A DNA stretch of 64,000 nt, taken from the NCBI GenBank assembly GCA_002269645.1, contig NIVC01000312.1:248001-312000 (forward strand). The letters run 5' to 3'. How positions within the stretch are numbered: position 1 is the stretch's first letter; the number at the start of each line of letters is the position of its first letter. Origin of the DNA: Macrostomum lignano. Its lineage: Eukaryota. The position numbers were made by a program, and so were the translations under genes. Under the pieces are notes generated by a model, which ran no database searches, was not told where the DNA came from, and worked only from the letters and a program-made list of their open reading frames with translations. Positions 25,700 to 40,196 of the stretch are shown one piece after another.

Positions 25700-28600
25700 T
25701 CAGAGCTCTTCCACCTTTTCAACCGCAGTCGTCTCGGTGCTGCCGATGTAGGAGTTCATCACGGATTGCACTGTCCCATCAGATTTAAGAGCAAACAACG
25801 CCCTGAAAATGTAGAACAGAAGCTCAAGAAGTTCGCACAGGGTGAGTATTGAAACGCCACACCAGAGGCCCAGAATGCCTGCAATTGAAGTTAAAAAATC
25901 GCTGAGAGTTAAATGCAAGACATTCTAACACGGTACTATAATCTGAACATCATTTCAATTGAGTACCTCCAAAGTCAGCCACTAAGTTCTTTGTGGGGTA
26001 GGCTTCCTCTTCAGAGATCTCCTGAATTTTGGCGCTCCACGCTTTGACTGTCAGCCAGGCGAGACGATTTTGAAGCGCCTCGAGTTCTGCGTCAAAGTTG
26101 AGCCTATCACTGGCTGTTTTATTGTCTGACGAAGACTCGGAGTAGCTCTGCACTTTCAGCAATACCTGATAGATATTAGCGAGGCCTCTCATACCGCTGA
26201 TGCTGGTTCTGTAGCCAAAGTTCGAGGCCAGCTGTTTTATTAGCTCAATTGATTGGGTATTTTTTAAATTGGGCCACGAATAAGTGACGAATCTGGTACT
26301 GTAGTCATCTGTGCGGCACGGCGGCTGGCAAATCTGGCTGCCTTCGAACTGGTAACGCTGTATCTCTGACACCTGTTCGTTGTAGCAGGTCTCAACAACT
26401 CGAGAGAAATTGCTAATGTCCTTGATGTCGAAACAGTTTTTGTACTTCGTGACTAAAGCCACTGGAATAGGTTGAAACGATGGTAAACACTTACAGTAGT
26501 CGATAAACTTTTGCACAATGTAGGTGTTGATGCAGTCCTCTCGATCAGAGACAAACTGCCTCTCGGAATCTTTCAAATCACTAAAATGGCAAATTAAGTA
26601 CCTATTCATCCTTCATTTCTAATAAAGACTCGAATGAAATGCAGCTTCACTTACATTGTCCCTCCTTTTAATTCAGTCATCTCACGTAGCTTTGTCAGCT
26701 TTTCAGCCCAATCTGATGAGGCAATTACCGCCTTAGCTGCTCTCTCAATTCTGCAATCATAAAAAATTTTTGATTACAAAAATCGAATACATAGATACAC
26801 ACGAGATCTACATGTTTGAGACTAGTTCACACAGCTCACTTTCCGCCATCATTTGATGAAGATAGATCCCAGGAAGGCAGTCGGTAACTATCCAGTTTTT
26901 CGGTCTCCTGACAAGGACTGGATTTAGTGGAGAGTCTTGAGTACTTCTCAAACCTAAGCTGCACGTCCATGCGTTGAGCAGCCGCTATCGCGATACTCCT
27001 GGACGCCCAGGGAAATTTCTTCTCCGGCACAATGATCGCCTGCGGTTTCAGAAACGGCAGAATGAACTCTTTGGCAAAAAGTTTGTAGAAGCATCGTTGA
27101 AAGAATTCCTTACATTTAGCGCCATATTGCTGTCATCAGAGGATGACATCACGCTGTCGTGAACAACTTGGTTGAGTTTTTCCATGCCAAATGGAAGCCG
27201 ACCCTTGGAATCTGTCGAGTCGGTGAAGTACATGATTGACAGCTCACTATTCGCCAGCTGTGTACTTGTCATATTGGCGGTAAACTTTCGCTTTAGAAAC
27301 TGGTGGCACATGCCAAGCTGGGGGTGCTCAAAATTCACAAAGTGCTCATTGGTGCACTTCTGGCCGGCGAAGCTGCAGCTGGCAAGTGCGATGCTGAGAT
27401 CGCTGCCAAATTGACGAGCGAGCAGATGCCTGCCCACAGAGTCTCTGATGGCGCCTGGGACGCTGCGAAATTTCGAATCTGCGACAATGTTTTAAATTAA
27501 GTCTGAAATTAATTGTTTTAATCTCGGATTAATATAATATTAAACATTCAAAACTCACAGCACAACGCCAAGTTACACGGCTCGAAGGCCATTTCGAAAA
27601 GAGTATGTTGAGAAATTTCTACGCGGTCAATGAAGCGAAGAGCGCGTTCCGGCAAGCAGGCGGGGACCTCAGACTCGAATGCTTTTTGACGCCTGAAATG
27701 AAATTGATTTATCGCTTTTAGCCTTCTGTTGGAATAGTAAAACAGATAAGATGCAGGATCCTCTGGCTCACTCGAAGTGGCTGTAGTTTTCATTCGCTAT
27801 GTCCATCACTACGCTCACTGAGCGGCAGTAGTTGTCCGTATTCGTCTTGGCTACGTCTGGCGTTTCAATTTGCATTTTCAGTAGCCTCCCAACTCCTTAA
27901 ATGTGAGTATTTTTGCAATCCATTTACCATATTGATTGGTTATTGTTTTAGTTAGGCCGTATGAATAAAGTGAGCTTTAGTTCCCAAATCCTAACTTAGC
28001 ATGACAAAAGCAACGCGCCATCGCGTTTCATTTCTGCCCCACTTCAATGCTCCTATGTCTATGGCCAAAAAGAGCTGTATGAAATGGAAGTATATAAAGG
28101 AAAAGACAGTAACCTCAACAGGTGGCAGGAGGGAAGACATTGCAGATCTCGGATCAAAAATGTTGTTGAACAGGAGTGTCGCAAACTCAACGTCAACGAG
28201 CTCCGTGGTCTTCATGACATTGAGATGTCAGCGCGAACGGAAGTGTAGACTAAGTAAAACGGAACAGGATAGTGTTCAATGCATTTGAGCGCACATATAA
28301 GGCAATGCTGACTGCGTTGTTAATATTGAACTTTTTTGTATTTGCTATTGTGTGTAACTGTTGGTCCGTTCGACGATGCGTGGATTGTCTATAAATACAC
28401 TGGCTTGTTGTAGACAGTTGTCTATGGTGAAAAGTCTGGCTTGTTGTAGACAGTTGTCTATGGTAAAAACTCTGGCTTGTTGTAGACAGTTGTCTATGGT
28501 AAAAAGCCCGGCAGCAAAGGATTGAAGAGGGTGGAAATATACGAATCCAAACTTGCAATCGATGGTCAGATTCTCGTTAAAGACAGAGAGCCAGCTTAAC

Positions 28601-31600
28601 TCAATAAAGCGACTTTGCACGCATACAGTGAACCTTCAGTTGACGGCAGCAGCATACCAGGGAATTAGCAACAGAATTCGGTGCTCAGTCATCATTTATG
28701 ACATCAATTCATAAACTATATCTCAATTCCGCTCAGAGTCTGAGAAGTTTGAAAACTCAGAGAAGTAATTGATCCCTTTATTCATACGGCCTATTTCATT
28801 TTACACTATGTAATTAATTCTTCTGCATCATATTTCGCACCGCGGCTTCTCATGCTCTGCTCTTGAATGCTGAACAGACGGCCCCAGGCAACGCAGTCCC
28901 TTCCAGGAAGCGTGTCGTTCTGCCAACCGGTGTACATCGACATTCGCTGCCGTTCCGCCGACTCGGAGCTGGAGCTCACGATACAGTCGTAGTTTTTGGA
29001 TATGGCTATAATTATAAAAACAGAAACGGGCTGCAAGGATTAGTACAGCAAACATTAGAGAAGGTAAAATATTTGCTAGAAATTGGCATCCGCCACGTTT
29101 ACACACTGAAACTACTAGCCTGAGCACTCAACCGATTAAATTTCCTGCCAACCAGTTTCGCTCAGTTGGTCAATAAGCGAATGCAAGCCTAAGTTTATTT
29201 GATCAACACGATCGCTCTTAGTAACTATGGCAATAGCAACGGTAGCCCCGATTGATATATGGTCAATTTAACAGCCGAAACATGGATCAAATTTAACGGT
29301 TATCAGCGTATTTGATCGTGAAAGCTCCAAATAGAAACCAAATATTCCAAATTCTTTACTCTGGGTGTTCTTATTTTTCTAACTGTGGTGTTTCAAAGGA
29401 ATTTTTTGGGAATTGAAGGGGCCGCAGCCCTTTCGTGTGGTGGTTGGCGACCCTGTCTGTCTCTTGGTGGGCGCCCCTGTCTCTTGGTGGGCGCCCCTGT
29501 CTCTTGGTGGGCGCCCCTGTCTCTTGGTGGGCGCCCCTGTCTCTTGGTGGGCGCCCCTGTCTGCCTCTTGGTGGGTGCCCCTGTCTCTTGGTGGGCGCCC
29601 CTGTCTGTCGGTTAGCGCCCCTGTCTGCCTCTTGGTGGGCGCCCCTGTCTCTTGGTGGGCGCCCCTGTCTCTTGGTTAGCGCCCCTGTCTCTTAGTGGAT
29701 GCCCCTGTCTCTTAGTAGGCGCCCCTATCTCTTGGTGGGCGCCCCTGTCTCTTGGTTAGCGCCCCTGTCTGTCTCTTGGTGGGCGCCCCTATCTCTTGGT
29801 GGGCGCCCCTGTCTCTTGGTTAGCGCCCCTGTCTGCCTCTTTGTGGGCGCCCCTGTCTCTTGGTGGGTGCCCCTGTCTCTTGGTGGACGCCCCTATCTCT
29901 TGGTGGGCGCCCCTGTCTCTTGGTTAGCGCCCCTGTCTATCGCTTGGTGGGCGCCCCTATCTCTTGGTGGGCGCCCCTGTCTCTTGGTTAGCGCCCCTGT
30001 CTGTCTCTTGGTGGGCGCCCCTATCTCTTGGTGGGCGCCCCTGTCTCTTGGTTAGCGCCCCTGTCTGTCTCTTGGTGGGCGCCCCTATCTCTTGGTGGGC
30101 GCCCCTGTCTCTTGGTTAGCGCCCCTGTCTGCCTCTTTGTGGGCGCCCCTGTCTCTTGGTGGGTGCCCCTGTTTCTTGGTGGGCGCCCCTGTCTCTTGGT
30201 TAGCGCCCCTGTCTCTTGGTTAGCGCCCCTGTCTGCCTCTTTGTGGGCGCCCCTGTCTCTTGGTGGGTGCCCCTGTCTCTTGGTGGGCGCCCCTATCTCT
30301 TGGTGGGCGCCCCTGTCTCTTGGTTAGCGCCCCTGTCTATCTCTTGGTGGGCGCCCCTATCTCTTGGTGGGCGCCCCTGTCTCTTGGTGGGCGCCCCTGT
30401 CTCTTGGTGGGCGCCCCTGTCTCTTGGTGGGCGCCCCTGTCTCTTGGTTAGCGCCCCTGTCTCTTAGTGGATGCCCTGTCTCTTAGTGGGCACCCCTACC
30501 CCGGTGGATGCCCGTTCAAGTCTTGTCAAAAGTTGAGCTCCTGTCATACTTTTGGGCTTCTTTACCACTTTCGTTTAGATTTTGGAGAAGCCCCACTGCT
30601 TTAGGGCGCGCCCCGATGGCCACCCTGCAAACGCCAATGTTGATTTTTTCCTGTATATTGAATGGGTCTACGACAACTGCCTTCCATTCCTCCCCCTAAA
30701 ATACGATGCTTAACAATAAAATAAACCAAGAAATTTTATTACTGCTCCGTAAATTTCAGTCACGGTAAACGCCTTAAATCGTGCGTTTTAGAAGTCATAA
30801 ATTCATATTGCACAATTTACACTGTTTATAGCTAGGTGTGGTAATTAATAGAGTATCCAGGCTTACCATTTTTTTTCAGAAAATGTTCTGTAAAATATGT
30901 CTTTTAGAAGCTAGTCATTATTGTTTTTATCTGGGATGCTCTGTGTGAAACCTGAGCAGGCCTAAGATTTGCACTTCGCTATATTGAACTATTCATGTCG
31001 GCAAAAATACAAAAAATTATTGAATATACCTGGTACAAGAACAAAATTTATATATTCAGGTGTTGATTAACTTCACTACTTATGTTTGAGCGGTAGCGAA
31101 TAATGATTCTCGATATCAGTATTTGTTAAATATCATCGCTGTAGCATTTCTGGCAGTCTAATTTGAACAGGTGCAACCTTATCGATTTAAGGCGTTCTCA
31201 AACTCACGACAGTAAGGTATGTCGCACAATGCAGCATTTAGCCTGCCGCTCTCATCGTCCGTAAAAAAGCAATAAGGCCCGTCTGAAAATGCCGCTAAGT
31301 TGCTGAAGTTTCCGATGTGCATAGGCTGGCTGTCTGGAATCAAATTAAAGATTTGAGCGTGAGCAATTTCTTTATTAGATTAGTAATTTACTGTGAAATT
31401 GGACTTGCCGACATCCCGGATCTGCAGGATGACGGCAATGCTACTGTCTGAACCGCAAGTCTGTAGGCGGCTGTTGGCGCACGGTGATGTACAGTTTGTT
31501 CGGCTGCTGTTGTCAACGCCGTCCAATCGTCCGCACAGACAGTCGCCACCGGTTACGAGAGCCGCATAAGGGAAATTGTAGCGATCGCAGCACTCGGCGC

Positions 31601-33162
31601 AGGTCTCATGCGCTTCGATGCCGTTTCTGTAGCAGGTGAAGTTGAATGCAGCCGCGGTCGCTGCATCAGTCACGGGGAAGCAACCGATCTGTTGAAGCTT
31701 AGGACCTAAAGCGAGTAGGAAAAAGTTGTTCAGAAAGCACCCGGATATTAACAGTATTAACAGTACGAATATACCAAACCATTTTTAGAAAATTCTTCGT
31801 GCTTTAACAATTACTTGCTTGCTAGCTAACTTTTTGTTGGGCAGCCTCTCTAACAAGAATCAAGTCGCCAGCCCTCCGGACCGTTAAGGCATTCAACAGC
31901 TCAGCAAGAAGATCGGATTTTGCATCAGAGCAGCCTTGGCAAGCCTCTAAATTTCATCAGAACGTCGACCAAATGTGTTTGTATCAGCTCTGACTTCGCA
32001 GGTCACTGGATTTCACCCAGGCGGCGCTTCTGGGAGGTAACACCTGGTGACCATGAACAACTCATTGGGAATTTCTCTGATGTCTCTGATCAAGCCTCGA
32101 CAATGGACAAACCTCTACTGGTAGGTATCCTCAGTTAGTCTCTTAAACATTCAGCCATCACCCAGACGCCATCGACACTTTCAACCGGGGGGCTGGATTC
32201 CCCCTATGATAGTTCTACTGTTAATTAACCTAAAAGATTTTGTTGAATTACTCACGAGTTGCTTTGTGTAGAAACGTCGATAGAGGTAAACCAGGAGGAG
32301 AGCGGCATCGAGTCTCATTGTCCGAGAAGTTAAGAGACAGCAGGCTCGCAGCCAGGCTGGCCTCGCCTCTGCTCTGCAGCATCCGAGCTGCATCGTTCCA
32401 TCTCATACACGGCGTCCTAGTGATGTAGGGCTTTAAACTCGGGACAGCTGTGTAGTTAAAGTACCTTGTGTCGTTGAAGTCCAGCCGAACTGTTGAGTAC
32501 CCGTATACCACAGCCGAGCTGACGTTGCCTGTGTAATCATTGCCAGTGAGACTGGTTCGGCAATCCAAATCTTGGCCTACGGTTTTCAATGGAATTTTCT
32601 AAAAGTTAGTCGTACTGACAACAATAATAGTTTATAATAAGCAACTTTTATTAATTATGTTAAACTTGCCGTTAAGAGGCACCTGTAACGACTTCATCAG
32701 CGATTCCTCGGTGCTTTGAATGACATCTAGAAATGCTTTGGTCGGCTCGTTCAGTACAGAATCAGTTTTTTTGGATAGATCAAAACTGTAGAATTCGATT
32801 TTTTCGCTTGTGTTCTTCTTAGTAAGATGCTCCATGTTCTCAATATTGAAGGTTGTCAACTTTTCTACCATGCGACTGGCCGTGATGGCCCGCGTGGGAC
32901 AGATGTACACATCCGGGAACTGGAACTTCAACGAGGACATGCTCATGCTGGTCATCACTGGGGCCTGAAGGAACCTTTCAAACAAAGTGGACAGGTGGTA
33001 GGCAAACCCGCTGTAGGTGCCTAGCAGGAATAGGACCCAGATGAGCCTGCCAAGTTGGCTGGACTGCTCAGAGAATCTGCCAAGTCCGTGAGCAGTTGTG
33101 TAGCCACAGAAACTGCTCACTGGTGCGCTCAGCTTCCGTGATGAGGAGTTGTAGCTACTCAT
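25700..33162 (-). CDS. DEG/ENaC channel subunit (1027 aa) with kringle-WSC-kringle insertion; exons 33162-32683, 32598-32256, 31705-31409, 31333-31208, 29005-28841, 27856-27772, 27692-27559, 27478-27114, 27039-26840, 26750-26655, 26580-25967, 25878-25700
   Basis: N-terminal TTAHG motif, TM1, FPDVYIC, SCSFAGQKC..HPQLGMCHQF, Cys-rich thumb (DCINT, CKCLP, CQPPC), pre-TM2/TM2 VADFGGILGLWCGVSILTLCE. All 11 introns are phase-compatible (one needs a GC donor). Exons sum to 3084 nt, in frame to the stop. Confidence 0.88.
28401..28508. repeat. 36-bp repeat x3 containing GTCTATGG, in an ENaC intron
   Basis: Unit TGGCTTGTTGTAGACAGTTGTCTATGGT(G/A)AAAA(G/A)(T/C)C. Confidence 0.85.
29455..30490. repeat. 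20-bp GGCGCCCCTGTCTCTTGGTG minisatellite in ENaC intron 4, inside a degenerate MITE-like shell (~29383-30639)
   Basis: Unit as at 10810. The right end reads CATTGGCGTTTGCAGGG on the minus strand; its match to the left end is weak (11/17) and no TSD is seen. Confidence 0.9.
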
Positions 33163-34300: not shown

Positions 34301-35376
34301 AAACCCACCCCATGAATTCATCACAATTCCATCTTGACACCAAGGCTCAAGAAGGAGTTGCTGAGATTCCACGGTTAAGAGGGGTTACCGATATTTTAGG
34401 CTATAGATTTTTTCTATCATGTCGACTGGTAATTCTCGATACAAGGTGCTAATACTAGTTATTTTGCTAAATTTATCATAAAATTTCGTTCATGATTAAA
34501 ACCCTGTTGTCTGCAGATATTTGATTCTAAGATTAGATTCTAAGCAAAAAATCTGGTGTACAATGTTGTGAATTAAACTAGAATCAAGGTCTGTGCGTTA
34601 CCTGATAGACTGGTGGCCTGGACAAACTTGGAACCGTTCTGATAGGGGTTATTGCTCAGATTTTACTGTCAGCGCCAGTCAGAAGCTGAGCGTCAGTCAC
34701 TCAATAGCAGCCACGGTGCTTCCGGTTGCCCTATCTGTTTACGCAAGCAATCTCATAAGATAATTGAATTAGGCGGAGTGGAATAAGTCTATTTTGTATA
34801 GACATCATTAAAGAGGAGTAAACAGTGTTCTCTGTTTTTATGCCATAACAATAATCGGGTGAAGCGGAGACTTTTAATAATTAATATAAATAAGTACTCT
34901 GCTACTAAAAGCAATTTTATATGCCACCCAACCCCACCAGGATCAGTTAGTGGGAGCCATATACCCCACGAAATCATTTACTGGTAGCCATATACCCGAC
35001 CAGGTCATTCAGTGGTAGTCTTACGACCCACCAAAGTACTTCAGTTGTAATTCTATGAATACTTCGTATTACTTTGAAATAATCCGTGTGGACATTTCAA
35101 CAGACTGCAATGAAAAATCATTGTTCTTATGGCTTGGGAGATGCAAACACACTGTATGATTTCCACGTGAGTGAGGCATTCAATTGAAACCTGCAACAAT
35201 AGACTGAAAAGGCAGTGTGTACATACTCGTACTCGTGCATGGGCTTCAATAAGCCTCGTAAATATTTTCCCAATTCTCTATTGTTGTTGCTGCTGCCACT
35301 AGACTGGGAAAAAAATGATCAACACAAAAAGCTACGGCACCATTGGGAAGATGTGCCGGTCATGTGAGCCGCTTAG

Positions 35377-35380
<4 letters not shown>

Positions 35381-35465
<85 letters not shown>

Positions 35466-35484
35466 CGAGAGAGAGAGAGAGAGA
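35381..35484. repeat. (GA)n microsatellite
   Basis: Direct reading. Confidence 0.97.
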
Positions 35485-35960
35485 GCTGGAGAGTATAATC
35501 AAAGAAAAAAAATGGTTGAAAAGCGCGGTTTTGTCGGCAGGGTAAAAACAATGGGACATGTAGTTTCTGAGCTCTCATCTAGGTGCCCAGAAGAGGACGC
35601 TGGGAAAAAGGCGGCTGCATGAGGTGGGATGTAGAGACTCCCAGATGGAGAGAGTTTGGAGAAATTGGAGAGGGGAAGAGAAATGGGCTGGGAATAAAAT
35701 ATGAAAATGCAGAGAGAATTGATGGTTAATGCTGGGTTTGGCAAACGGACGAACAATGAGAAAGTGGTGGAGATTTATGATAGGTTCAGAGAAATAAAAA
35801 GGTGAATAGCCACATCACACAGGCGTTCCTATTGGTTCTGATCTAAGAAGCATAAGAAAATCCACACAGCTCTAACGGTATAAATTATTGCTACGTTTTA
35901 TATTAGTGACCAGGTGTTGCAAAGGTTAGAGTTCCAGGAGCAATTCAATTGCTGATAACA

Positions 35961-36291
35961 ATGACTCTAATTACCCGGCTTCTTTTTCTTAGCTGCTCGC
36001 TGTCTGTCTCCATGGCAGCCCTGACAATTGTATGCGAAAATGATACAATGACGGCCGACTGCGCAACCCAGGTGATATCCATTTCCATTGCAACATTCGG
36101 CAAGTCGAGCATGTTCTCCGCCTCGTGTCCGAACCAGTCGCCGACTGAGTGCAACAGCGGCACCGCCTACGGGCTGATCAGCGACGCCTGCGAGGGCCAG
36201 AACAGCTGCTCGATGGCCGCGAGTAAAGCGCTGTTTGGCGATCCGTGTCCCGGATACGAGAGCTACATGGTGCTGTACTACAGCTGTAAAG
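35961..36291 (+). CDS. Secreted SUEL lectin, first exon (signal peptide + SUEL domain); downstream exon(s) not identified
   Basis: MTLITRLLFLSCSLSVSMA signal; VCENDTMTADC..ATFGK..CEGQNSCSMAASKALFGDPCPG..YMVLYYSC; donor G|GTGAGG (phase 1). Confidence 0.85.
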
Positions 36292-36374
36292 GTGAGGCGT
36301 TGAGGTTTCAACAGTACAACAGATCGATTTTCAAACGGGTGCCATTTTTTATTCGGTCCTTTTTCTTCATGGTT

Positions 36375-37590
36375 GGACAGTCAGTTCCTCAGTTTGACTG
36401 GCACGAAATGAAAGTCCTTCATCATAGTTGCATGGACTGTCAGTTCCTCAGTTTAACTGGCACGGAATGAAAGTCCTTCATCATAGTTGCATGGACTGTC
36501 AGTTCTTCAGTTTAACTGGCACGGAATGAAAGTCCTTCATCATAGTTGCATGGACTGTCAGTTCCTCAGTTTGACTGGCACGAAATGAAAGTCCTTCATC
36601 ATAGTTGCATGGACTGTCAGTTCCTCAGTTTGACTGGCACGAAATGAAAGTCCTTCATCATAGTTGCATGGACTGTCAGTTCTTCAGTTTAACTGGCACG
36701 GAATGAAAGTCCTTCATCATAGTTGCATGGACTGTCAGTTCTTCAGTTTAACTGGCACGGAATGAAAGTCCTTCATCATAGTTGCATGGACTGTCAGTTC
36801 CTCAGTTTAACTGGCACGGAATGAAAGTCCTTCATCATAGTTGCATGGACTGTCAGTTCTTCAGTTTAACTGGCACGGAATGAAAGTCCTTCATCATAGT
36901 TGCATGGACTGTCAGTTCTTCAGTTTAACTGGCACGGAATGAAAGTCCTTCATCATAGTTGCATGGACTGTCAGTTCTTCAGTTTAACTGGCACGGAATG
37001 AAAGTCCTTCATCACAGTGGGACTGTCAGTTCCTCAGTTTAACTGGCACGGAATGAAAGTCCTTCATCATAGTTGCATGGACTGTCAGTTCCTCAGTTTA
37101 ACTGGCACGGAATGAAAGTCCTTCATCATAGTTGCATGGACTGTCAGTTCCTCAGTTTAACTGGCACGGAATGAAATTCCTTCATCATAGTTGCATGGAC
37201 TGTCAGTTCCTCAGTTTAACTGGCACGGAATAAAAGTCCTTCATCATAGTTGCATGGACTGTCAGTTCTTCAGTTTAACTGGCACGGAATGAAAGTCCTT
37301 CATCATAGTTGCATGGACTGTCAGTTCCTCAGTTTAACTGGCACGGAATGAAATTCCTTCATCATAGTTGCATGGACTGTCAGTTCCTCAGTTTAACTGG
37401 CACGGAATGAAAGTCCTTCATCATAGTTGCATGGACTGTCAGTTCCTCAGTTTAACTGGCACGGAATGAAATTCCTTCATCACAGTGGGACTGTCAGTTC
37501 CTCAGTTTGACTGGCACGGAATGAAATTCCTTCATCACAGTGGGACTGTCAGTTCCTCAGTTTGACTGGCACGGAATGAAAGTCCTTCAT
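36375..37590. repeat. 59-bp minisatellite (~21 units)
   Basis: Unit GGACTGTCAGTTCCTCAGTTTAACTGGCACGGAATGAAAGTCCTTCATCATAGTTGCAT. Confidence 0.95.
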
Positions 37591-38966: not shown

Positions 38967-40196
38967 ATGGAGGGCACAATGTTTTTCACACTTCGTCAGG
39001 CCAATTGCACGCCGGAGTTTCGTCGGGCAGCCTACAATCCCTCGGACACTGTCCGGGTGACCATCTACAGCTTGACAGTGTTGCAGGCCGCCATTCTACC
39101 CGTTGGGGCTGCCCTCAACATTGCCTGTTTTGCTACCCTGCTGCGCTATCCACTTGGCGCCGAGGTGAACGGGCACTTTGTGAGTTTCAGCGTCTGCGAT
39201 ACAGCGTTTCTCCTGTTTAATCTGCTCGACACCATCAGCCATTGTGTCGAGAACTCAACACCGTTGACTGACGGTCCGGAACCCTTCAACTACATTGCCT
39301 ATGTCCATCCGATTGCGTGGACACTGCGCAGTGTGGTGTACACTGCTCACAGTTGGCAGACGGTGCTGCTTAGCGGCCTCAAATGGCTACGCATCTGCCG
39401 GCCGCTGTCGGCCCTGCCAGAGTCCAGAATTCGCCACCTCATCGGGCTTGTTTGGCTGTACAGTCTGGTCACCAGCATTCCACCGATTCTGCTGTTCCAA
39501 GCATTTGTCACGGTTCTGTATGCCAACTGCCATGACCAGGGCTTCCGGGTCGCCGGCAGCGGTTATCACCGACTCTACAGCATCGACAACAGTGGAGACG
39601 TTGGTGGCGGCATCATACCGCCCGCCATTCCACCGTCATTTGTCGCCGTGAACGCGTCCTTGCTGCCGGCGCTTATCTGCCTGATCTGCAGTCTGGGCAT
39701 CGTGTGGCGCCTGCGACACCCAGTCCTGCATCATCTACCGCGTCGCCGGCATCTCCGTCGGCAAGAAAACAACTTCCTGGATCCTGGCGCAGCTCGGCTA
39801 GGCCGCGAAGCCACTCGCGCAGTGCTCATGTCGGCTAACAGTTTCCTGCTCTTCCAAATCCCGATGGTTATCTGGACATTGGTGGACACCTGGTACTGGA
39901 AGCTGCTGCAGCCGGCGGTCTTCTCAATGCTCGTTGTAGTCAGCAACACAATCAGCCAAGCATTCTTTGCGGTGGACCTGTCGGTGTGTCTTCACAGCAA
40001 TCACCAGTTTTCTAGCAACCTTCGAAGATACCTGCAGCCGTTTTGCCAGTGCAGAAAGCACTTCAAGCAGCAAAAACAGCAGCAGAAGCCGTGCAACAAG
40101 CAGTTTGAGCTTCGACGACTTCGAGGCTTTTCGGACTGCAATGGCGTGGAAGAGCAGGCCGGGACCTTCTCTATCTGCAGCTCAACTCTGATCTGA
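38967..40196 (+). CDS. Intronless divergent class A GPCR (peptide-receptor-like), 409 aa
   Basis: Seven hydrophobic segments; TM1 GAALNI, TM2 SVCDT, TM3 end LKWLRICRPL, TM5 LLPALIC, TM6 FLLFQIP. Confidence 0.85.
   Translation: MEGTMFFTLRQANCTPEFRRAAYNPSDTVRVTIYSLTVLQAAILPVGAALNIACFATLLRYPLGAEVNGHFVSFSVCDTAFLLFNLLDTISHCVENSTPLTDGPEPFNYIAYVHPIAWTLRSVVYTAHSWQTVLLSGLKWLRICRPLSALPESRIRHLIGLVWLYSLVTSIPPILLFQAFVTVLYANCHDQGFRVAGSGYHRLYSIDNSGDVGGGIIPPAIPPSFVAVNASLLPALICLICSLGIVWRLRHPVLHHLPRRRHLRRQENNFLDPGAARLGREATRAVLMSANSFLLFQIPMVIWTLVDTWYWKLLQPAVFSMLVVVSNTISQAFFAVDLSVCLHSNHQFSSNLRRYLQPFCQCRKHFKQQKQQQKPCNKQFELRRLRGFSDCNGVEEQAGTFSICSSTLI

What the first reader, a model, noticed from the sequence alone, without database searches (positions are those of the whole stretch)
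31208..32598. WSC domain nested inside a kringle on a skippable phase 1-1 exon that needs a GC-AG intron
Seen: the first three kringle cysteines are on exon 32598-32256 and the last three on exon 31333-31208. The 297-nt WSC exon (31705-31409) lies between them, in the loop after CRSP. It is symmetric, so skipping it keeps the frame and restores a contiguous kringle. The only in-frame donor is G|GCAAGT at 31408 (75-nt GC-AG intron); the nearby GT donor at 31391 leads to a stop. Inference: domain-in-domain insertion by exon shuffling, and possibly an alternative-splicing switch between two sensor isoforms.
Basis: partly seen in the sequence, partly recalled or inferred. Interest (0 to 1): 0.75.

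Follow-up and report, generated by a model that had tools for sequence, protein, structure and literature searches.

The report
WSC domain nested in channel kringle
A flatworm (Macrostomum lignano) sodium-channel gene of the DEG/ENaC family carries, in its outer loop, a kringle domain that is split in two by a complete WSC domain encoded on its own exon; the layout is real and conserved in a species-restricted gene family, the odd GC splice donor is very probably genuine, but nothing supports the idea that the WSC exon is switched in and out.

Summary
Exon A (32598-32256, minus strand) carries kringle Cys1-3, exon B (31705-31409, 297 nt, phase 1-1) is a WSC domain, and exon C (31333-31208) carries Cys4-6.

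Profile-profile comparison of the unedited family alignment matches kringle positions 1-60 before the WSC and 62-84 after it (Prob 90% and 92%). With the inserts cut out, the window protein and six paralogs each hit Pfam Kringle almost end to end, just under the curated cut-off.

The host gene is a 12-exon, about 1040-aa DEG/ENaC channel of Macrostomum lignano. The cassette (split kringle, WSC, second kringle) sits in the finger region. All relatives with this layout, from several divergent paralog groups, come from this one species.

In four paralog loci the WSC-exon donor sits at the same phase-1 position and is G|GT. Here it is G|GCAAGT, with a flanking context stronger than 39 of 43 family donors. 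A second candidate GC donor lies at the exon 1/A junction.

No gene model lacks the WSC and no RNA data could be reached, so the alternative-splicing idea is untested and unsupported. Structure prediction confirmed the WSC fold but could not show that the halves form one kringle.

The parts
32670..33162 (-). Exon 1: start codon, HG motif (FCGYTTAHGLGRF), TM1 and the first part of the ASC ectodomain. It ends at 32670 if the GC donor ACG|GCAAGT is used, or at 32683 if the weak GT donor CAG|GTGCCT is used.
   Evidence: Pfam ASC profile positions 1-123, E=3e-18. Donor alternatives are shown. The paralog junction phase is shown.
32256..32598 (-). Exon A: N-terminal half of kringle K1 (Cys1, Cys2, Cys3). 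It includes a variable glycosylated loop of about 30 aa between Cys1 and Cys2. The alternative start is 32576, phase 1, when paired with the GC donor of exon 1.
   Evidence: Translation. hhalign family columns 7-91 match kringle positions 1-60, Prob 90.2%, E=1.5e-6. HMM pieces 1-16 and 21-61 are collinear.
31706..32255 (-). Intron A/B, 550 nt, GT-AG, phase 1.
   Evidence: Same position and phase in four paralog loci.
31409..31705 (-). Exon B: complete WSC domain, 297 nt, phase 1-1. It has 10 cysteines, 9 of them invariant across the paralogs aligned.
   Evidence: Pfam WSC E=3.1e-8, 34.2 bits against cut-off 27.8. Invariant Cys. The model of paralog P0005 matches Wsc1 (7pz2, TM 0.72) and Kremen1.
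31334..31408 (-). Intron B/C, 75 nt, GC-AG (G|GCAAGT ... TTCCAG|A), phase 1.
   Evidence: Sequence. Paralog donors at the same position are G|GTAGGT, G|GTAAGT, G|GTGAGG and G|GTGCGA. Flanking-context score is 6.38, at or above 39 of 43 family donors.
31208..31333 (-). Exon C: C-terminal half of kringle K1 (Cys4, Cys5, Cys6; GPYCFF...LCDIPYC), 126 nt, phase 1-1.
   Evidence: hhalign family columns 215-238 match kringle positions 62-84, Prob 92.0%, E=6.4e-7. HMM piece 47-85 has i-E 9e-6.
27559..29005 (-). Second, contiguous but expanded kringle-like domain K2, on three exons: K2a 29005-28841, K2b 27895-27772, K2c 27692-27559.
   Evidence: My own kringle HMM positions 9-85 match aa 439-524, i-E 1.4e-6. 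Pfam Kringle gives E=0.59 for the window and about 1e-3 for paralog P0001. Exon mapping.
25700..27478 (-). Rest of the DEG/ENaC channel: exons 27478-27114, 27039-26840, 26750-26655, 26580-25967 and 25878-25700. This includes TM2 with the GVS filter motif and the stop codon.
   Evidence: Pfam ASC E=1e-41, profile positions 148-455. 100% identity to UniProt model P0002 over several exons. Full model.
32577..32669 (-). Candidate second GC-AG intron, 93 nt (ACG|GCAAGT ... CCGTAG|GC), at the conserved phase-1 exon 1/A junction.
   Evidence: The competing GT donor scores below all 43 family donors.

Best explanation
The region is part of one 12-exon gene for a DEG/ENaC (amiloride-sensitive-type) channel subunit of Macrostomum lignano, about 1037-1040 aa long.

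Its extracellular finger region carries a cysteine-rich cassette of about 400 aa, lying between ASC profile positions ~123 and ~148. The cassette is a divergent kringle (K1) interrupted in its Cys3-Cys4 loop by a complete WSC domain, followed by a second kringle-like domain (K2).

The WSC is a constitutive, long-established part of this cassette. It sits on its own phase 1-1 exon, flanked by phase-1 introns. This is what insertion of a shuffled module into a pre-existing intron would leave.

In this gene copy the WSC-exon donor has GC instead of GT, a T-to-C change at +2 relative to its paralogs. It is most likely spliced normally as a U2-type GC-AG intron. The exon 1/A junction probably uses a GC donor as well.

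Inferred, not shown:
- The two K1 halves pair through the canonical 1-6, 2-4 and 3-5 disulfides, with the WSC projecting from the loop.
- The K1/WSC/K2 head acts as a glycan-, matrix- or protein-binding module that modulates or tethers channel gating through the finger domain.
For: Gene and species:
- Pfam ASC E=1e-41. Exon 1 covers ASC profile 1-123.
- 100% identity to the M. lignano UniProt model P0002.
- Full open 12-exon model.

Split kringle:
- hhalign of the unedited family alignment against a 51-kringle profile gives two complementary hits: kringle 1-60 (Prob 90.2%) and 62-84 (Prob 92.0%).
- Unfiltered hmmsearch gives collinear pieces around the WSC in the window protein and in 6 paralogs.
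- Excised K1 sequences hit Pfam Kringle over positions 5-79 of 79 (4-79 for P0011), E=7e-8 for the window and 4e-8 to 2e-4 for six paralogs.
- An exhaustive phmmer search with paralog P0005 retrieves genuine multi-kringle proteins at E 1e-15 to 1e-9.
- All six K1 cysteines are invariant in the seven sequences aligned. The kringle disulfide pattern links every N-half cysteine to a C-half cysteine (Kremen1 structure, PMC5014086).

WSC:
- Pfam E=3e-8.
- The AF2 model of the P0005 segment has pLDDT 81.5. Foldseek matches Wsc1 7pz2 at TM 0.72 and Kremen1 at E 3e-5.
- The WSC sheet order b1-b5-b3-b4-b2 puts its first and last strands side by side, which is compatible with insertion in a loop.

Conservation:
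- The same exon structure and phases occur in four paralog loci at 32-52% identity.
- Every paralog model aligned contains the WSC region.

GC donor:
- The homologous donors are G|GT in all four paralogs.
- Its flanking context is at or above 39 of 43 family donors. This fits the known rule that GC donors otherwise adhere closely to consensus (PMC2490688).
- GGCAAGT occurs only 4 times on this strand of the window, and two of those sit exactly on conserved donor positions of this gene.
Against: - No transcript evidence of any kind was available, so use of the GC donor is inferred.
- Native K1 is below Pfam's kringle cut-off. Even the excised version scores 33.0 bits against 34.3.
- phmmer against PDB sequences found nothing.
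- Foldseek returned no stand-alone kringle chain.
- The second AF2 run used an alignment to which I had added kringle and WSC fragments, so it is not independent of the hypothesis.
- The Cys2-Cys3 segment is predicted helical, which I regard as unusual for a kringle.
- The public model at this locus (P0002) lacks the upstream exons. That would also fit a copy whose 5' part is not expressed.
- The proposed function is pure inference.
Confidence: 0.72

Rival explanations
1. One reading: the WSC exon is a regulated cassette exon. The weak GC donor allows inclusion or skipping, giving two channel isoforms with and without WSC.
For: - Exon B is phase 1-1 and skipping it keeps the frame.
- GC donors are enriched in alternatively spliced genes, and a GC donor controls regulated splicing in C. 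elegans let-2 (PMC2490688).
- Some paralog gene models differ in which 1-1 exon they include: P0001 and P0007 lack exon C.
Against: - None of the paralog models aligned lacks the WSC region.
- The WSC cysteines and the flanking linkers (LPLxxF) are invariant across 32-52% identical paralogs.
- Paralogs with ordinary GT donors have the same layout.
- Skipping would leave a 38-residue Cys3-Cys4 loop rather than a normal kringle.
- All four cassette exons are symmetric for historical reasons, so symmetry carries no specific signal.
Confidence: 0.12
2. The GC at +2 is a disabling mutation. This copy either uses the weaker route (GT donor at 31391 with the internal acceptor at 31325) or is a decaying redundant copy in a recently duplicated genome.
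For: - The in-frame alternative route exists.
- Near-identical copies exist: P0003 and P0004 are 93-99% identical.
- The public model P0002 omits all upstream exons.
- No protein containing this copy's exons A-C is present in the databases searched.
Against: - All 12 exons are open and every family-invariant cysteine is retained.
- Both GC donors keep a perfect AAGT.
- The alternative GT donor scores at or above only 6 of 43 family donors.
- The GC route preserves the paralog length and the motif IRDxDSxP.
Confidence: 0.13
3. K1N and K1C are leftovers of two different kringles that flanked a WSC (a KR-WSC-KR array with reciprocal deletions). Under this reading they are not one domain with an insertion.
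For: - Tandem kringles are common, and a second kringle follows directly.
- Foldseek did not recover a whole-kringle match.
Against: - The halves are exactly complementary, kringle positions 1-60 and 62-84.
- Together they supply exactly one copy of each of the six cysteines, all invariant.
- In the 1-6, 2-4, 3-5 pattern, each half alone would be left with three unpaired cysteines.
Confidence: 0.03

Closest known systems
Kremen1/Kremen2 ectodomain (Kringle-WSC-CUB)
   Same: It is the characterised animal protein I know of that combines a kringle with a WSC domain, and there the two pack tightly and jointly form a ligand (Dkk) binding face (PMC5014086). Kremen1 is among the best structural matches of the modelled segment.
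   Different: - In Kremen the WSC follows the complete kringle. Here it lies inside the Cys3-Cys4 loop.
- There is no CUB domain here (Pfam).
- The host is a two-TM ion channel, not a type I receptor.
- Neither the 99 sequence hits of the exhaustive search nor the subset I scanned with Pfam included a protein combining kringle and WSC outside this family.
DEG/ENaC channels with lineage-specific finger-region insertions (nematode degenerin extracellular regulatory and cysteine-rich domains, ENaC GRIP domain)
   Same: - Same channel family: Pfam ASC, HG motif, TM2 GxS motif.
- The insertion lies in the variable finger region between ASC profile positions ~123 and ~148.
- That the finger hosts the regulatory inserts of other family members is my own knowledge.
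   Different: The inserted module is made of recognisable mobile domains (kringle, WSC) and is about 400 aa long. I found no paper describing a DEG/ENaC with WSC or kringle domains.
Domain-in-domain insertions created by exon shuffling of phase 1-1 modules (Patthy's class 1-1 modules; split PH domains as examples of nested domains)
   Same: A complete module on a symmetric phase 1-1 exon sits inside another domain at an intron position, and the parent domain's halves are retained.
   Different: To my knowledge a kringle as the recipient domain has not been described. This comparison rests on my own knowledge and was not tested against a database.
U2-type GC-AG introns
   Same: - The donor is GC at +1/+2 with otherwise strong consensus (GCAAGT), and the acceptor is AG.
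- It arose by a GT-to-GC change relative to its paralogs.
- Both features are typical of the class (PMC2490688).
   Different: There are probably two such introns in one gene. Their usage is not verified by RNA.

Membership tests
Kringle domain (Pfam PF00051) | Six cysteines in the conserved order and motif contexts (C..G..Y.G, C.W, CR.P, P.C, C.IP.C) | tested here: met
   All six are present and invariant in 7 family sequences. hhalign matches kringle 1-60 and 62-84 at Prob 90-92%.
Kringle domain (Pfam PF00051) | Score above Pfam's curated gathering cut-off (34.3 bits) | tested here: not met
   The native sequence gives no hit at E<=10. With inserts excised the scores are 33.0 bits (window) and 21.9-33.8 bits (paralogs), aligned over positions 5-79 of 79 (4-79 for P0011).
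Kringle domain (Pfam PF00051) | Single compact triple-loop fold with 1-6, 2-4, 3-5 disulfides | tested here: inconclusive
   The AF2 model of the P0005 segment is confident (pLDDT 81.5). The disulfide pattern is taken from PMC5014086.
Kringle domain (Pfam PF00051) | Lysine-binding site residues (Asp55/Asp57 in CRNPDGD, Trp62, Trp72); a feature of lysine-binding kringles only | tested here: not met
   The window has CRSPPGL, GPYC and LNAALC at these positions (alignment). The identity of the site residues is my own knowledge.
WSC domain (Pfam PF01822) | Pfam score above cut-off and the eight conserved cysteines | tested here: met
   Exon B alone scores 34.2 bits against 27.8, E=3.1e-8. In the 867-aa draft protein it scores 27.8. 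Cysteines matching the Kremen1 C122...C198 pattern are present, with 9 Cys invariant in the family.
WSC domain (Pfam PF01822) | PAN-like beta-sheet plus helix fold | tested here: met
   This was tested for paralog P0005, not the window protein. Foldseek matches Wsc1 7pz2 at TM(target) 0.72, E=1.9e-5, and Kremen1 5fwu at E=3.3e-5.
DEG/ENaC channel (Pfam PF00858 ASC) | ASC profile match, two TM segments, N-terminal HG motif, TM2 G-x-S motif | tested here: met
   E=1e-41. Exon 1 covers profile 1-123. FCGYTTAHG and GLWCGVSILTLCELLE are visible in the translation.
Kremen family | Kringle then WSC then CUB in tandem, on a type I membrane protein | tested here: not met
   The WSC is nested rather than tandem. 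There is no CUB hit. The host is a two-TM channel.
GC-AG (U2-type) intron | GC at +1/+2 with strong remaining donor consensus, AG acceptor, position homologous to a GT donor in relatives | tested here: met
GC-AG (U2-type) intron | Spliced at that site in RNA | not testable with these tools
   No transcript or read data could be reached. No protein spanning the junction of this copy is in the databases searched.
Cassette (alternatively skipped) exon | Both inclusion and skipping isoforms observed | not testable with these tools
   Only the frame-preserving symmetry is shown. None of the paralog models aligned lacks the WSC region.

The most novel reading that the evidence does not exclude
Macrostomum has evolved a private class of DEG/ENaC channels whose gate is coupled to a Kremen-like kringle/WSC head. 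This would be a glycan-, matrix- or ligand-sensing module plugged into the finger domain. GC donors at module boundaries would allow regulated inclusion of modules, giving channel isoforms with different sensing heads.
Probability: 0.1. Interest if true: 0.75.

Novelty: new variant of a known kind. Interest (0 to 1): 0.5.

Why it matters
It gives a clean example of exon shuffling that places one mobile domain inside another without destroying the recipient. All the historical traces are still visible: symmetric phase-1 exons, complementary halves, and paralogs with the same junctions.

It also shows that DEG/ENaC channels can acquire large adhesion or receptor-type modules in the finger region. 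The finger is the part that tunes gating in ASICs, ENaC and degenerins. That makes a directly testable hypothesis: a channel gated or tethered through a kringle/WSC head, in a transgenic, RNAi-amenable laboratory flatworm.

On the practical side, the public protein model at this locus is truncated. GT-only gene predictors will mis-model this gene because of one, and probably two, GC-AG introns.

Tried and rejected
Searches and tests that gave nothing:
- Pfam on native A+B+C and A+C gave no kringle hit.
- phmmer of A+C+K2 against PDB sequences gave nothing at E<=10.
- The first AF2 run, with a 6-sequence family alignment, gave pLDDT 55.8 and meaningless Foldseek matches.

Steps blocked by the tools:
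Paralog P0005 had to stand in for the window protein.
- The loci of P0001, P0003, P0004, P0006 and P0007 are not on record. I therefore could not check the near-identical copies for GT versus GC, nor the subfamily whose models skip exon C.

Alignment attempts:
- Adding whole kringle units, or N and C halves, to the MAFFT alignment misplaced them into the WSC columns.
- Only short N-terminal fragments and C-terminal halves aligned correctly.

Literature:
- Searches found nothing for M. lignano GC-AG or non-canonical splicing, or for DEG/ENaC with WSC or kringle.

Corrected along the way:
- My first gene models lacked K2 and then lacked the 96-nt exon at 26750-26655. Both were fixed.

Rejected explanations:
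- A Kremen homolog, because the domain order is wrong and there is no CUB.
- An exon belonging to another gene, because the position and phase are conserved in four paralogs.


Full report
**What is in the sequence**

- Exon A is 32598-32256, 343 nt, with donor CTC|GTGAGT.
- Exon B is 31705-31409, 297 nt, with acceptor TTTAG|G and donor TCG|GCAAGT.
- Exon C is 31333-31208, 126 nt, with acceptor TTCCAG|A and donor GTC|GTGAGT.

Joined A+B+C they read through without a stop, and so does A+C. Exon B alone hits Pfam WSC at E=3.1e-8, 34.2 bits against a cut-off of 27.8.

Exon A carries three cysteines in the contexts DC..G..Y.G, PCMRW and RCRSPPG. Exon C carries three more in GPYCFF, LCDIP and YC. 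The B/C intron is 75 nt and is GC-AG. The GT at 31391 joined to the 31333 acceptor gives a stop.

**The gene around it**

The exons belong to a DEG/ENaC channel gene.
- Exon 1 starts with ATG at 33162. It has the HG motif and TM1 and matches ASC profile positions 1-123.
- The exons from 27478 down to 25700 match ASC positions 148-455, E=1e-41.
- These downstream exons are 100% identical to a UniProt model from Macrostomum lignano (P0002, A0A1I8HSZ3). The window is therefore from that flatworm.

Guided by paralogs, I assembled a 12-exon open model of 1037-1040 aa. After exon C come three exons (29005-28841, 27895-27772, 27692-27559) that encode a second kringle-like domain, K2.

The whole cassette (K1 N-half, WSC, K1 C-half, K2) lies between ASC profile positions ~123 and ~148. 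This is the variable finger region. The public model P0002 starts inside K2 and misses everything upstream.

**Is it a kringle?**

Native K1 is not detected by Pfam or by phmmer against PDB sequences. Four other tests agree that it is kringle-derived.
1. I removed the 31-aa variable loop and the WSC with its linkers. The window K1 then hits Pfam Kringle over positions 5-79 of 79 at E=7.4e-8, 33.0 bits against a cut-off of 34.3. The same excision in six paralogs gives E=4e-8 to 2e-4 over essentially the same span.
2. An exhaustive phmmer search with the cassette of paralog P0005 retrieves multi-kringle proteins of the ostracod Darwinula stevensoni at E 1e-15 to 1e-9. The best stretches span K1C and K2N. 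These proteins are bona fide kringle proteins (Pfam 1e-61 to 1e-90).
3. I built an HMM from 51 kringle units of those hits and ran it without filters on the unedited window protein. It gives collinear pieces: HMM 1-16 at aa 173-188, HMM 21-61 at aa 222-262, then the WSC, then HMM 47-85 at aa 374-415 (i-E 9e-6), then K2 (i-E 1.4e-6). The same pattern appears in six paralogs.
4. hhalign of the unedited 7-sequence family alignment against the kringle profile gives two complementary local matches. Family columns 7-91 match kringle 1-60 (Prob 90.2%, E=1.5e-6). Columns 215-238 match kringle 62-84 (Prob 92.0%, E=6.4e-7).

The WSC therefore sits at kringle position 60/62, right after CR.PxG.

**Do the halves form one domain?**

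All six K1 cysteines are invariant in the seven sequences aligned. In kringles the bonds are 1-6, 2-4 and 3-5, as in Kremen1 C32-C114, C55-C95 and C84-C109 (PMC5014086). Every N-half cysteine therefore needs a C-half partner. That is a strong argument for one fold, but it is indirect.

The WSC sheet order b1-b5-b3-b4-b2 puts its first and last strands side by side, as an inserted domain requires.

- With six family sequences the model was poor, pLDDT 55.8.
- With 146 rows, including WSC homologs and kringle N- and C-fragments, it reached pLDDT 81.5 and pTM 0.68. Only the variable loop was disordered.
- Foldseek then matched yeast Wsc1 (7pz2, TM 0.72) and Kremen1 (173-213 aligned columns, E about 3e-5). 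It returned no isolated kringle chain.

The WSC fold is confirmed. The 'one kringle' fold is neither shown nor refuted. That alignment contained kringle fragments that I had chosen, so the model is not independent evidence.

**A conserved family feature**

Searches found at least eight divergent M. lignano paralog groups (32-54% identity) with the same order: TM1, K1N, WSC, K1C, K2, ASC. Every family member whose source I looked up is from M. lignano. The non-family hits I scanned with Pfam are WSC-only or kringle-only.

Four paralog loci from assembly GCA_002269645.1 (L001-L004) show the same exons with the same phases. Nine WSC cysteines and the linker motif LPLxxF are invariant.

Every paralog model aligned contains the WSC region. 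Two models (P0001, P0007) lack exon C and one (P0006) shortens it. Those would leave unpaired cysteines, so they look like prediction errors, but I could not fetch their loci.

**The GC donor**

At the nucleotide homologous to 31409|31408 the four paralogs read ACG|GTAGGT, CCG|GTAAGT, CGG|GTGAGG and CAG|GTGCGA, all phase 1. The window reads TCG|GCAAGT.

I built a weight matrix from the 43 GT donors of the paralog genes and scored candidates while ignoring +1/+2.
- The GC donor scores 6.38, at or above 39 of 43 family donors.
- The nearby GT donor ACA|GTAAAT scores 1.20, at or above only 6 of 43.

This fits the published rule that GC donors make up less than 1% of donors, arise from GT-to-GC changes, and otherwise hold closely to consensus (PMC2490688).

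The GC route also gives ...IRDVDSQP..., which matches the paralogs IRDNGSRP and IRDTDSKP in length.

The GC donor is the best choice but not the only one.

**A second GC donor**

In all four paralogs the exon 1/A junction is phase 1 and lies 5-6 codons before Cys1. At that position the window has ACG|GCAAGT (exon 1 ending at 32670). This pairs with acceptor CCGTAG|GC (exon A starting at 32576) to give ...SLQVPLN|GQDLDC.

Its context score is 6.18, at or above 37 of 43 family donors. The GT donor I first used (CAG|GTGCCT, 32683|32682, paired with the acceptor at 32598) scores -2.56, below all 43.

GGCAAGT occurs only four times on this strand of the 64-kb window. Two of the four are these conserved donor positions.

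With the GC model, exons A, B, C and K2a are all phase 1-1. The cassette is also bounded by phase-1 junctions on both sides. This is the signature of module insertion into a phase-1 intron.

**Alternative splicing**

Nothing I could reach tests it. The points in favour are the symmetric exon and the general link between GC donors and regulated splicing.

The points against are these.
- The WSC is universally present and strongly conserved.
- Paralogs with plain GT donors have the same layout.
- A skipped product would have a 38-residue Cys3-Cys4 loop.
- All cassette exons are symmetric, so symmetry is not a specific signal.

I put this reading at about 0.12.

**Function (inference only)**

The cassette is extracellular, disulfide-rich and glycosylated (NxT/S sites in the variable loop). 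It is attached to the finger, which to my knowledge tunes gating in this channel family.

The kringle lacks the lysine-binding residues: CRSPPGL instead of CRNPDGD, and no Trp72 equivalent. That these are the site residues is my own knowledge.

WSC domains bind carbohydrates or act in wall and matrix sensing. In Kremen1 the kringle-WSC pair forms one ligand-binding face.

The most likely role is a binding or tethering head that modulates the channel.

**Verdict**

- The domain-in-domain and GC-AG parts of the interpretation are supported.
- The splicing-switch part is unsupported.
- The architecture appears undescribed in the literature I could search. It is, however, present unannotated in public M. 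lignano proteomes.
- I rate it as a new variant of known kinds, of moderate interest.

Noticed in passing
window 32577-32670 (-): A second candidate GC-AG intron lies in the same gene. The donor ACG|GCAAGT sits at the conserved phase-1 exon 1/A junction and pairs with acceptor CCGTAG|GC. The competing GT donor CAG|GTGCCT scores below all 43 family donors.
   Followed up: yes
window 25700-33162 (-): The public protein model for this locus (UniProt A0A1I8HSZ3, P0002) starts inside the second kringle. It lacks exon 1, both kringle-1 halves, the WSC and K2a. No database protein searched contains this copy's upstream exons.
   Followed up: partly
window 26655-26750 (-): A 96-nt phase 2-2 exon (KIERAAKAVIASSDWAEKLTKLREMTELKGGT) matches an exon of paralog P0005. 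It is partly present in the model of near-identical copy P0003 but absent from P0002 and P0004. This is either a prediction inconsistency or a real optional exon.
   Followed up: partly
window 25700-33162 (-), exon phases: With the GC model, exons A, B, C and K2a are all phase 1-1. The whole kringle/WSC/kringle cassette is bounded by phase-1 junctions. This suggests the cassette entered a phase-1 intron of an ancestral channel gene.
   Followed up: partly
paralog proteins P0001, P0006, P0007 (no loci available): Gene models of one subfamily skip or shorten the exon C equivalent, which would leave three unpaired kringle cysteines. The cause could be further non-canonical splice sites there, or prediction errors.
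   Followed up: no
window 27559-29005 (-): The second kringle K2 is contiguous, but its Cys3-Cys4 and Cys4-Cys5 loops are expanded. This is the same region that hosts the WSC in K1.
   Followed up: no
window 29457-30497: A tandem array of about 50 copies of a 20-nt unit (CTGTCTCTTGGTGGGCGCCC) lies inside the 2.2-kb intron between exon C and K2a. A smaller 36-nt repeat lies at 28385-28506.
   Followed up: no
window 35949-36470 (+): An ORF contains a SUEL-type galactose/rhamnose-binding lectin domain (Pfam PF02140, E=2.6e-15). It is probably part of a neighbouring gene.
   Followed up: no
window 38967-40196 (+): A 409-aa single-exon ORF has weak rhodopsin-type 7TM receptor similarity (PF00001, E=2.3e-5, below the cut-off).
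   Followed up: no
window ~35340-35560: An AG/CT dinucleotide microsatellite is visible as long RERERE and SLSLSL ORFs in the ORF list.
   Followed up: no
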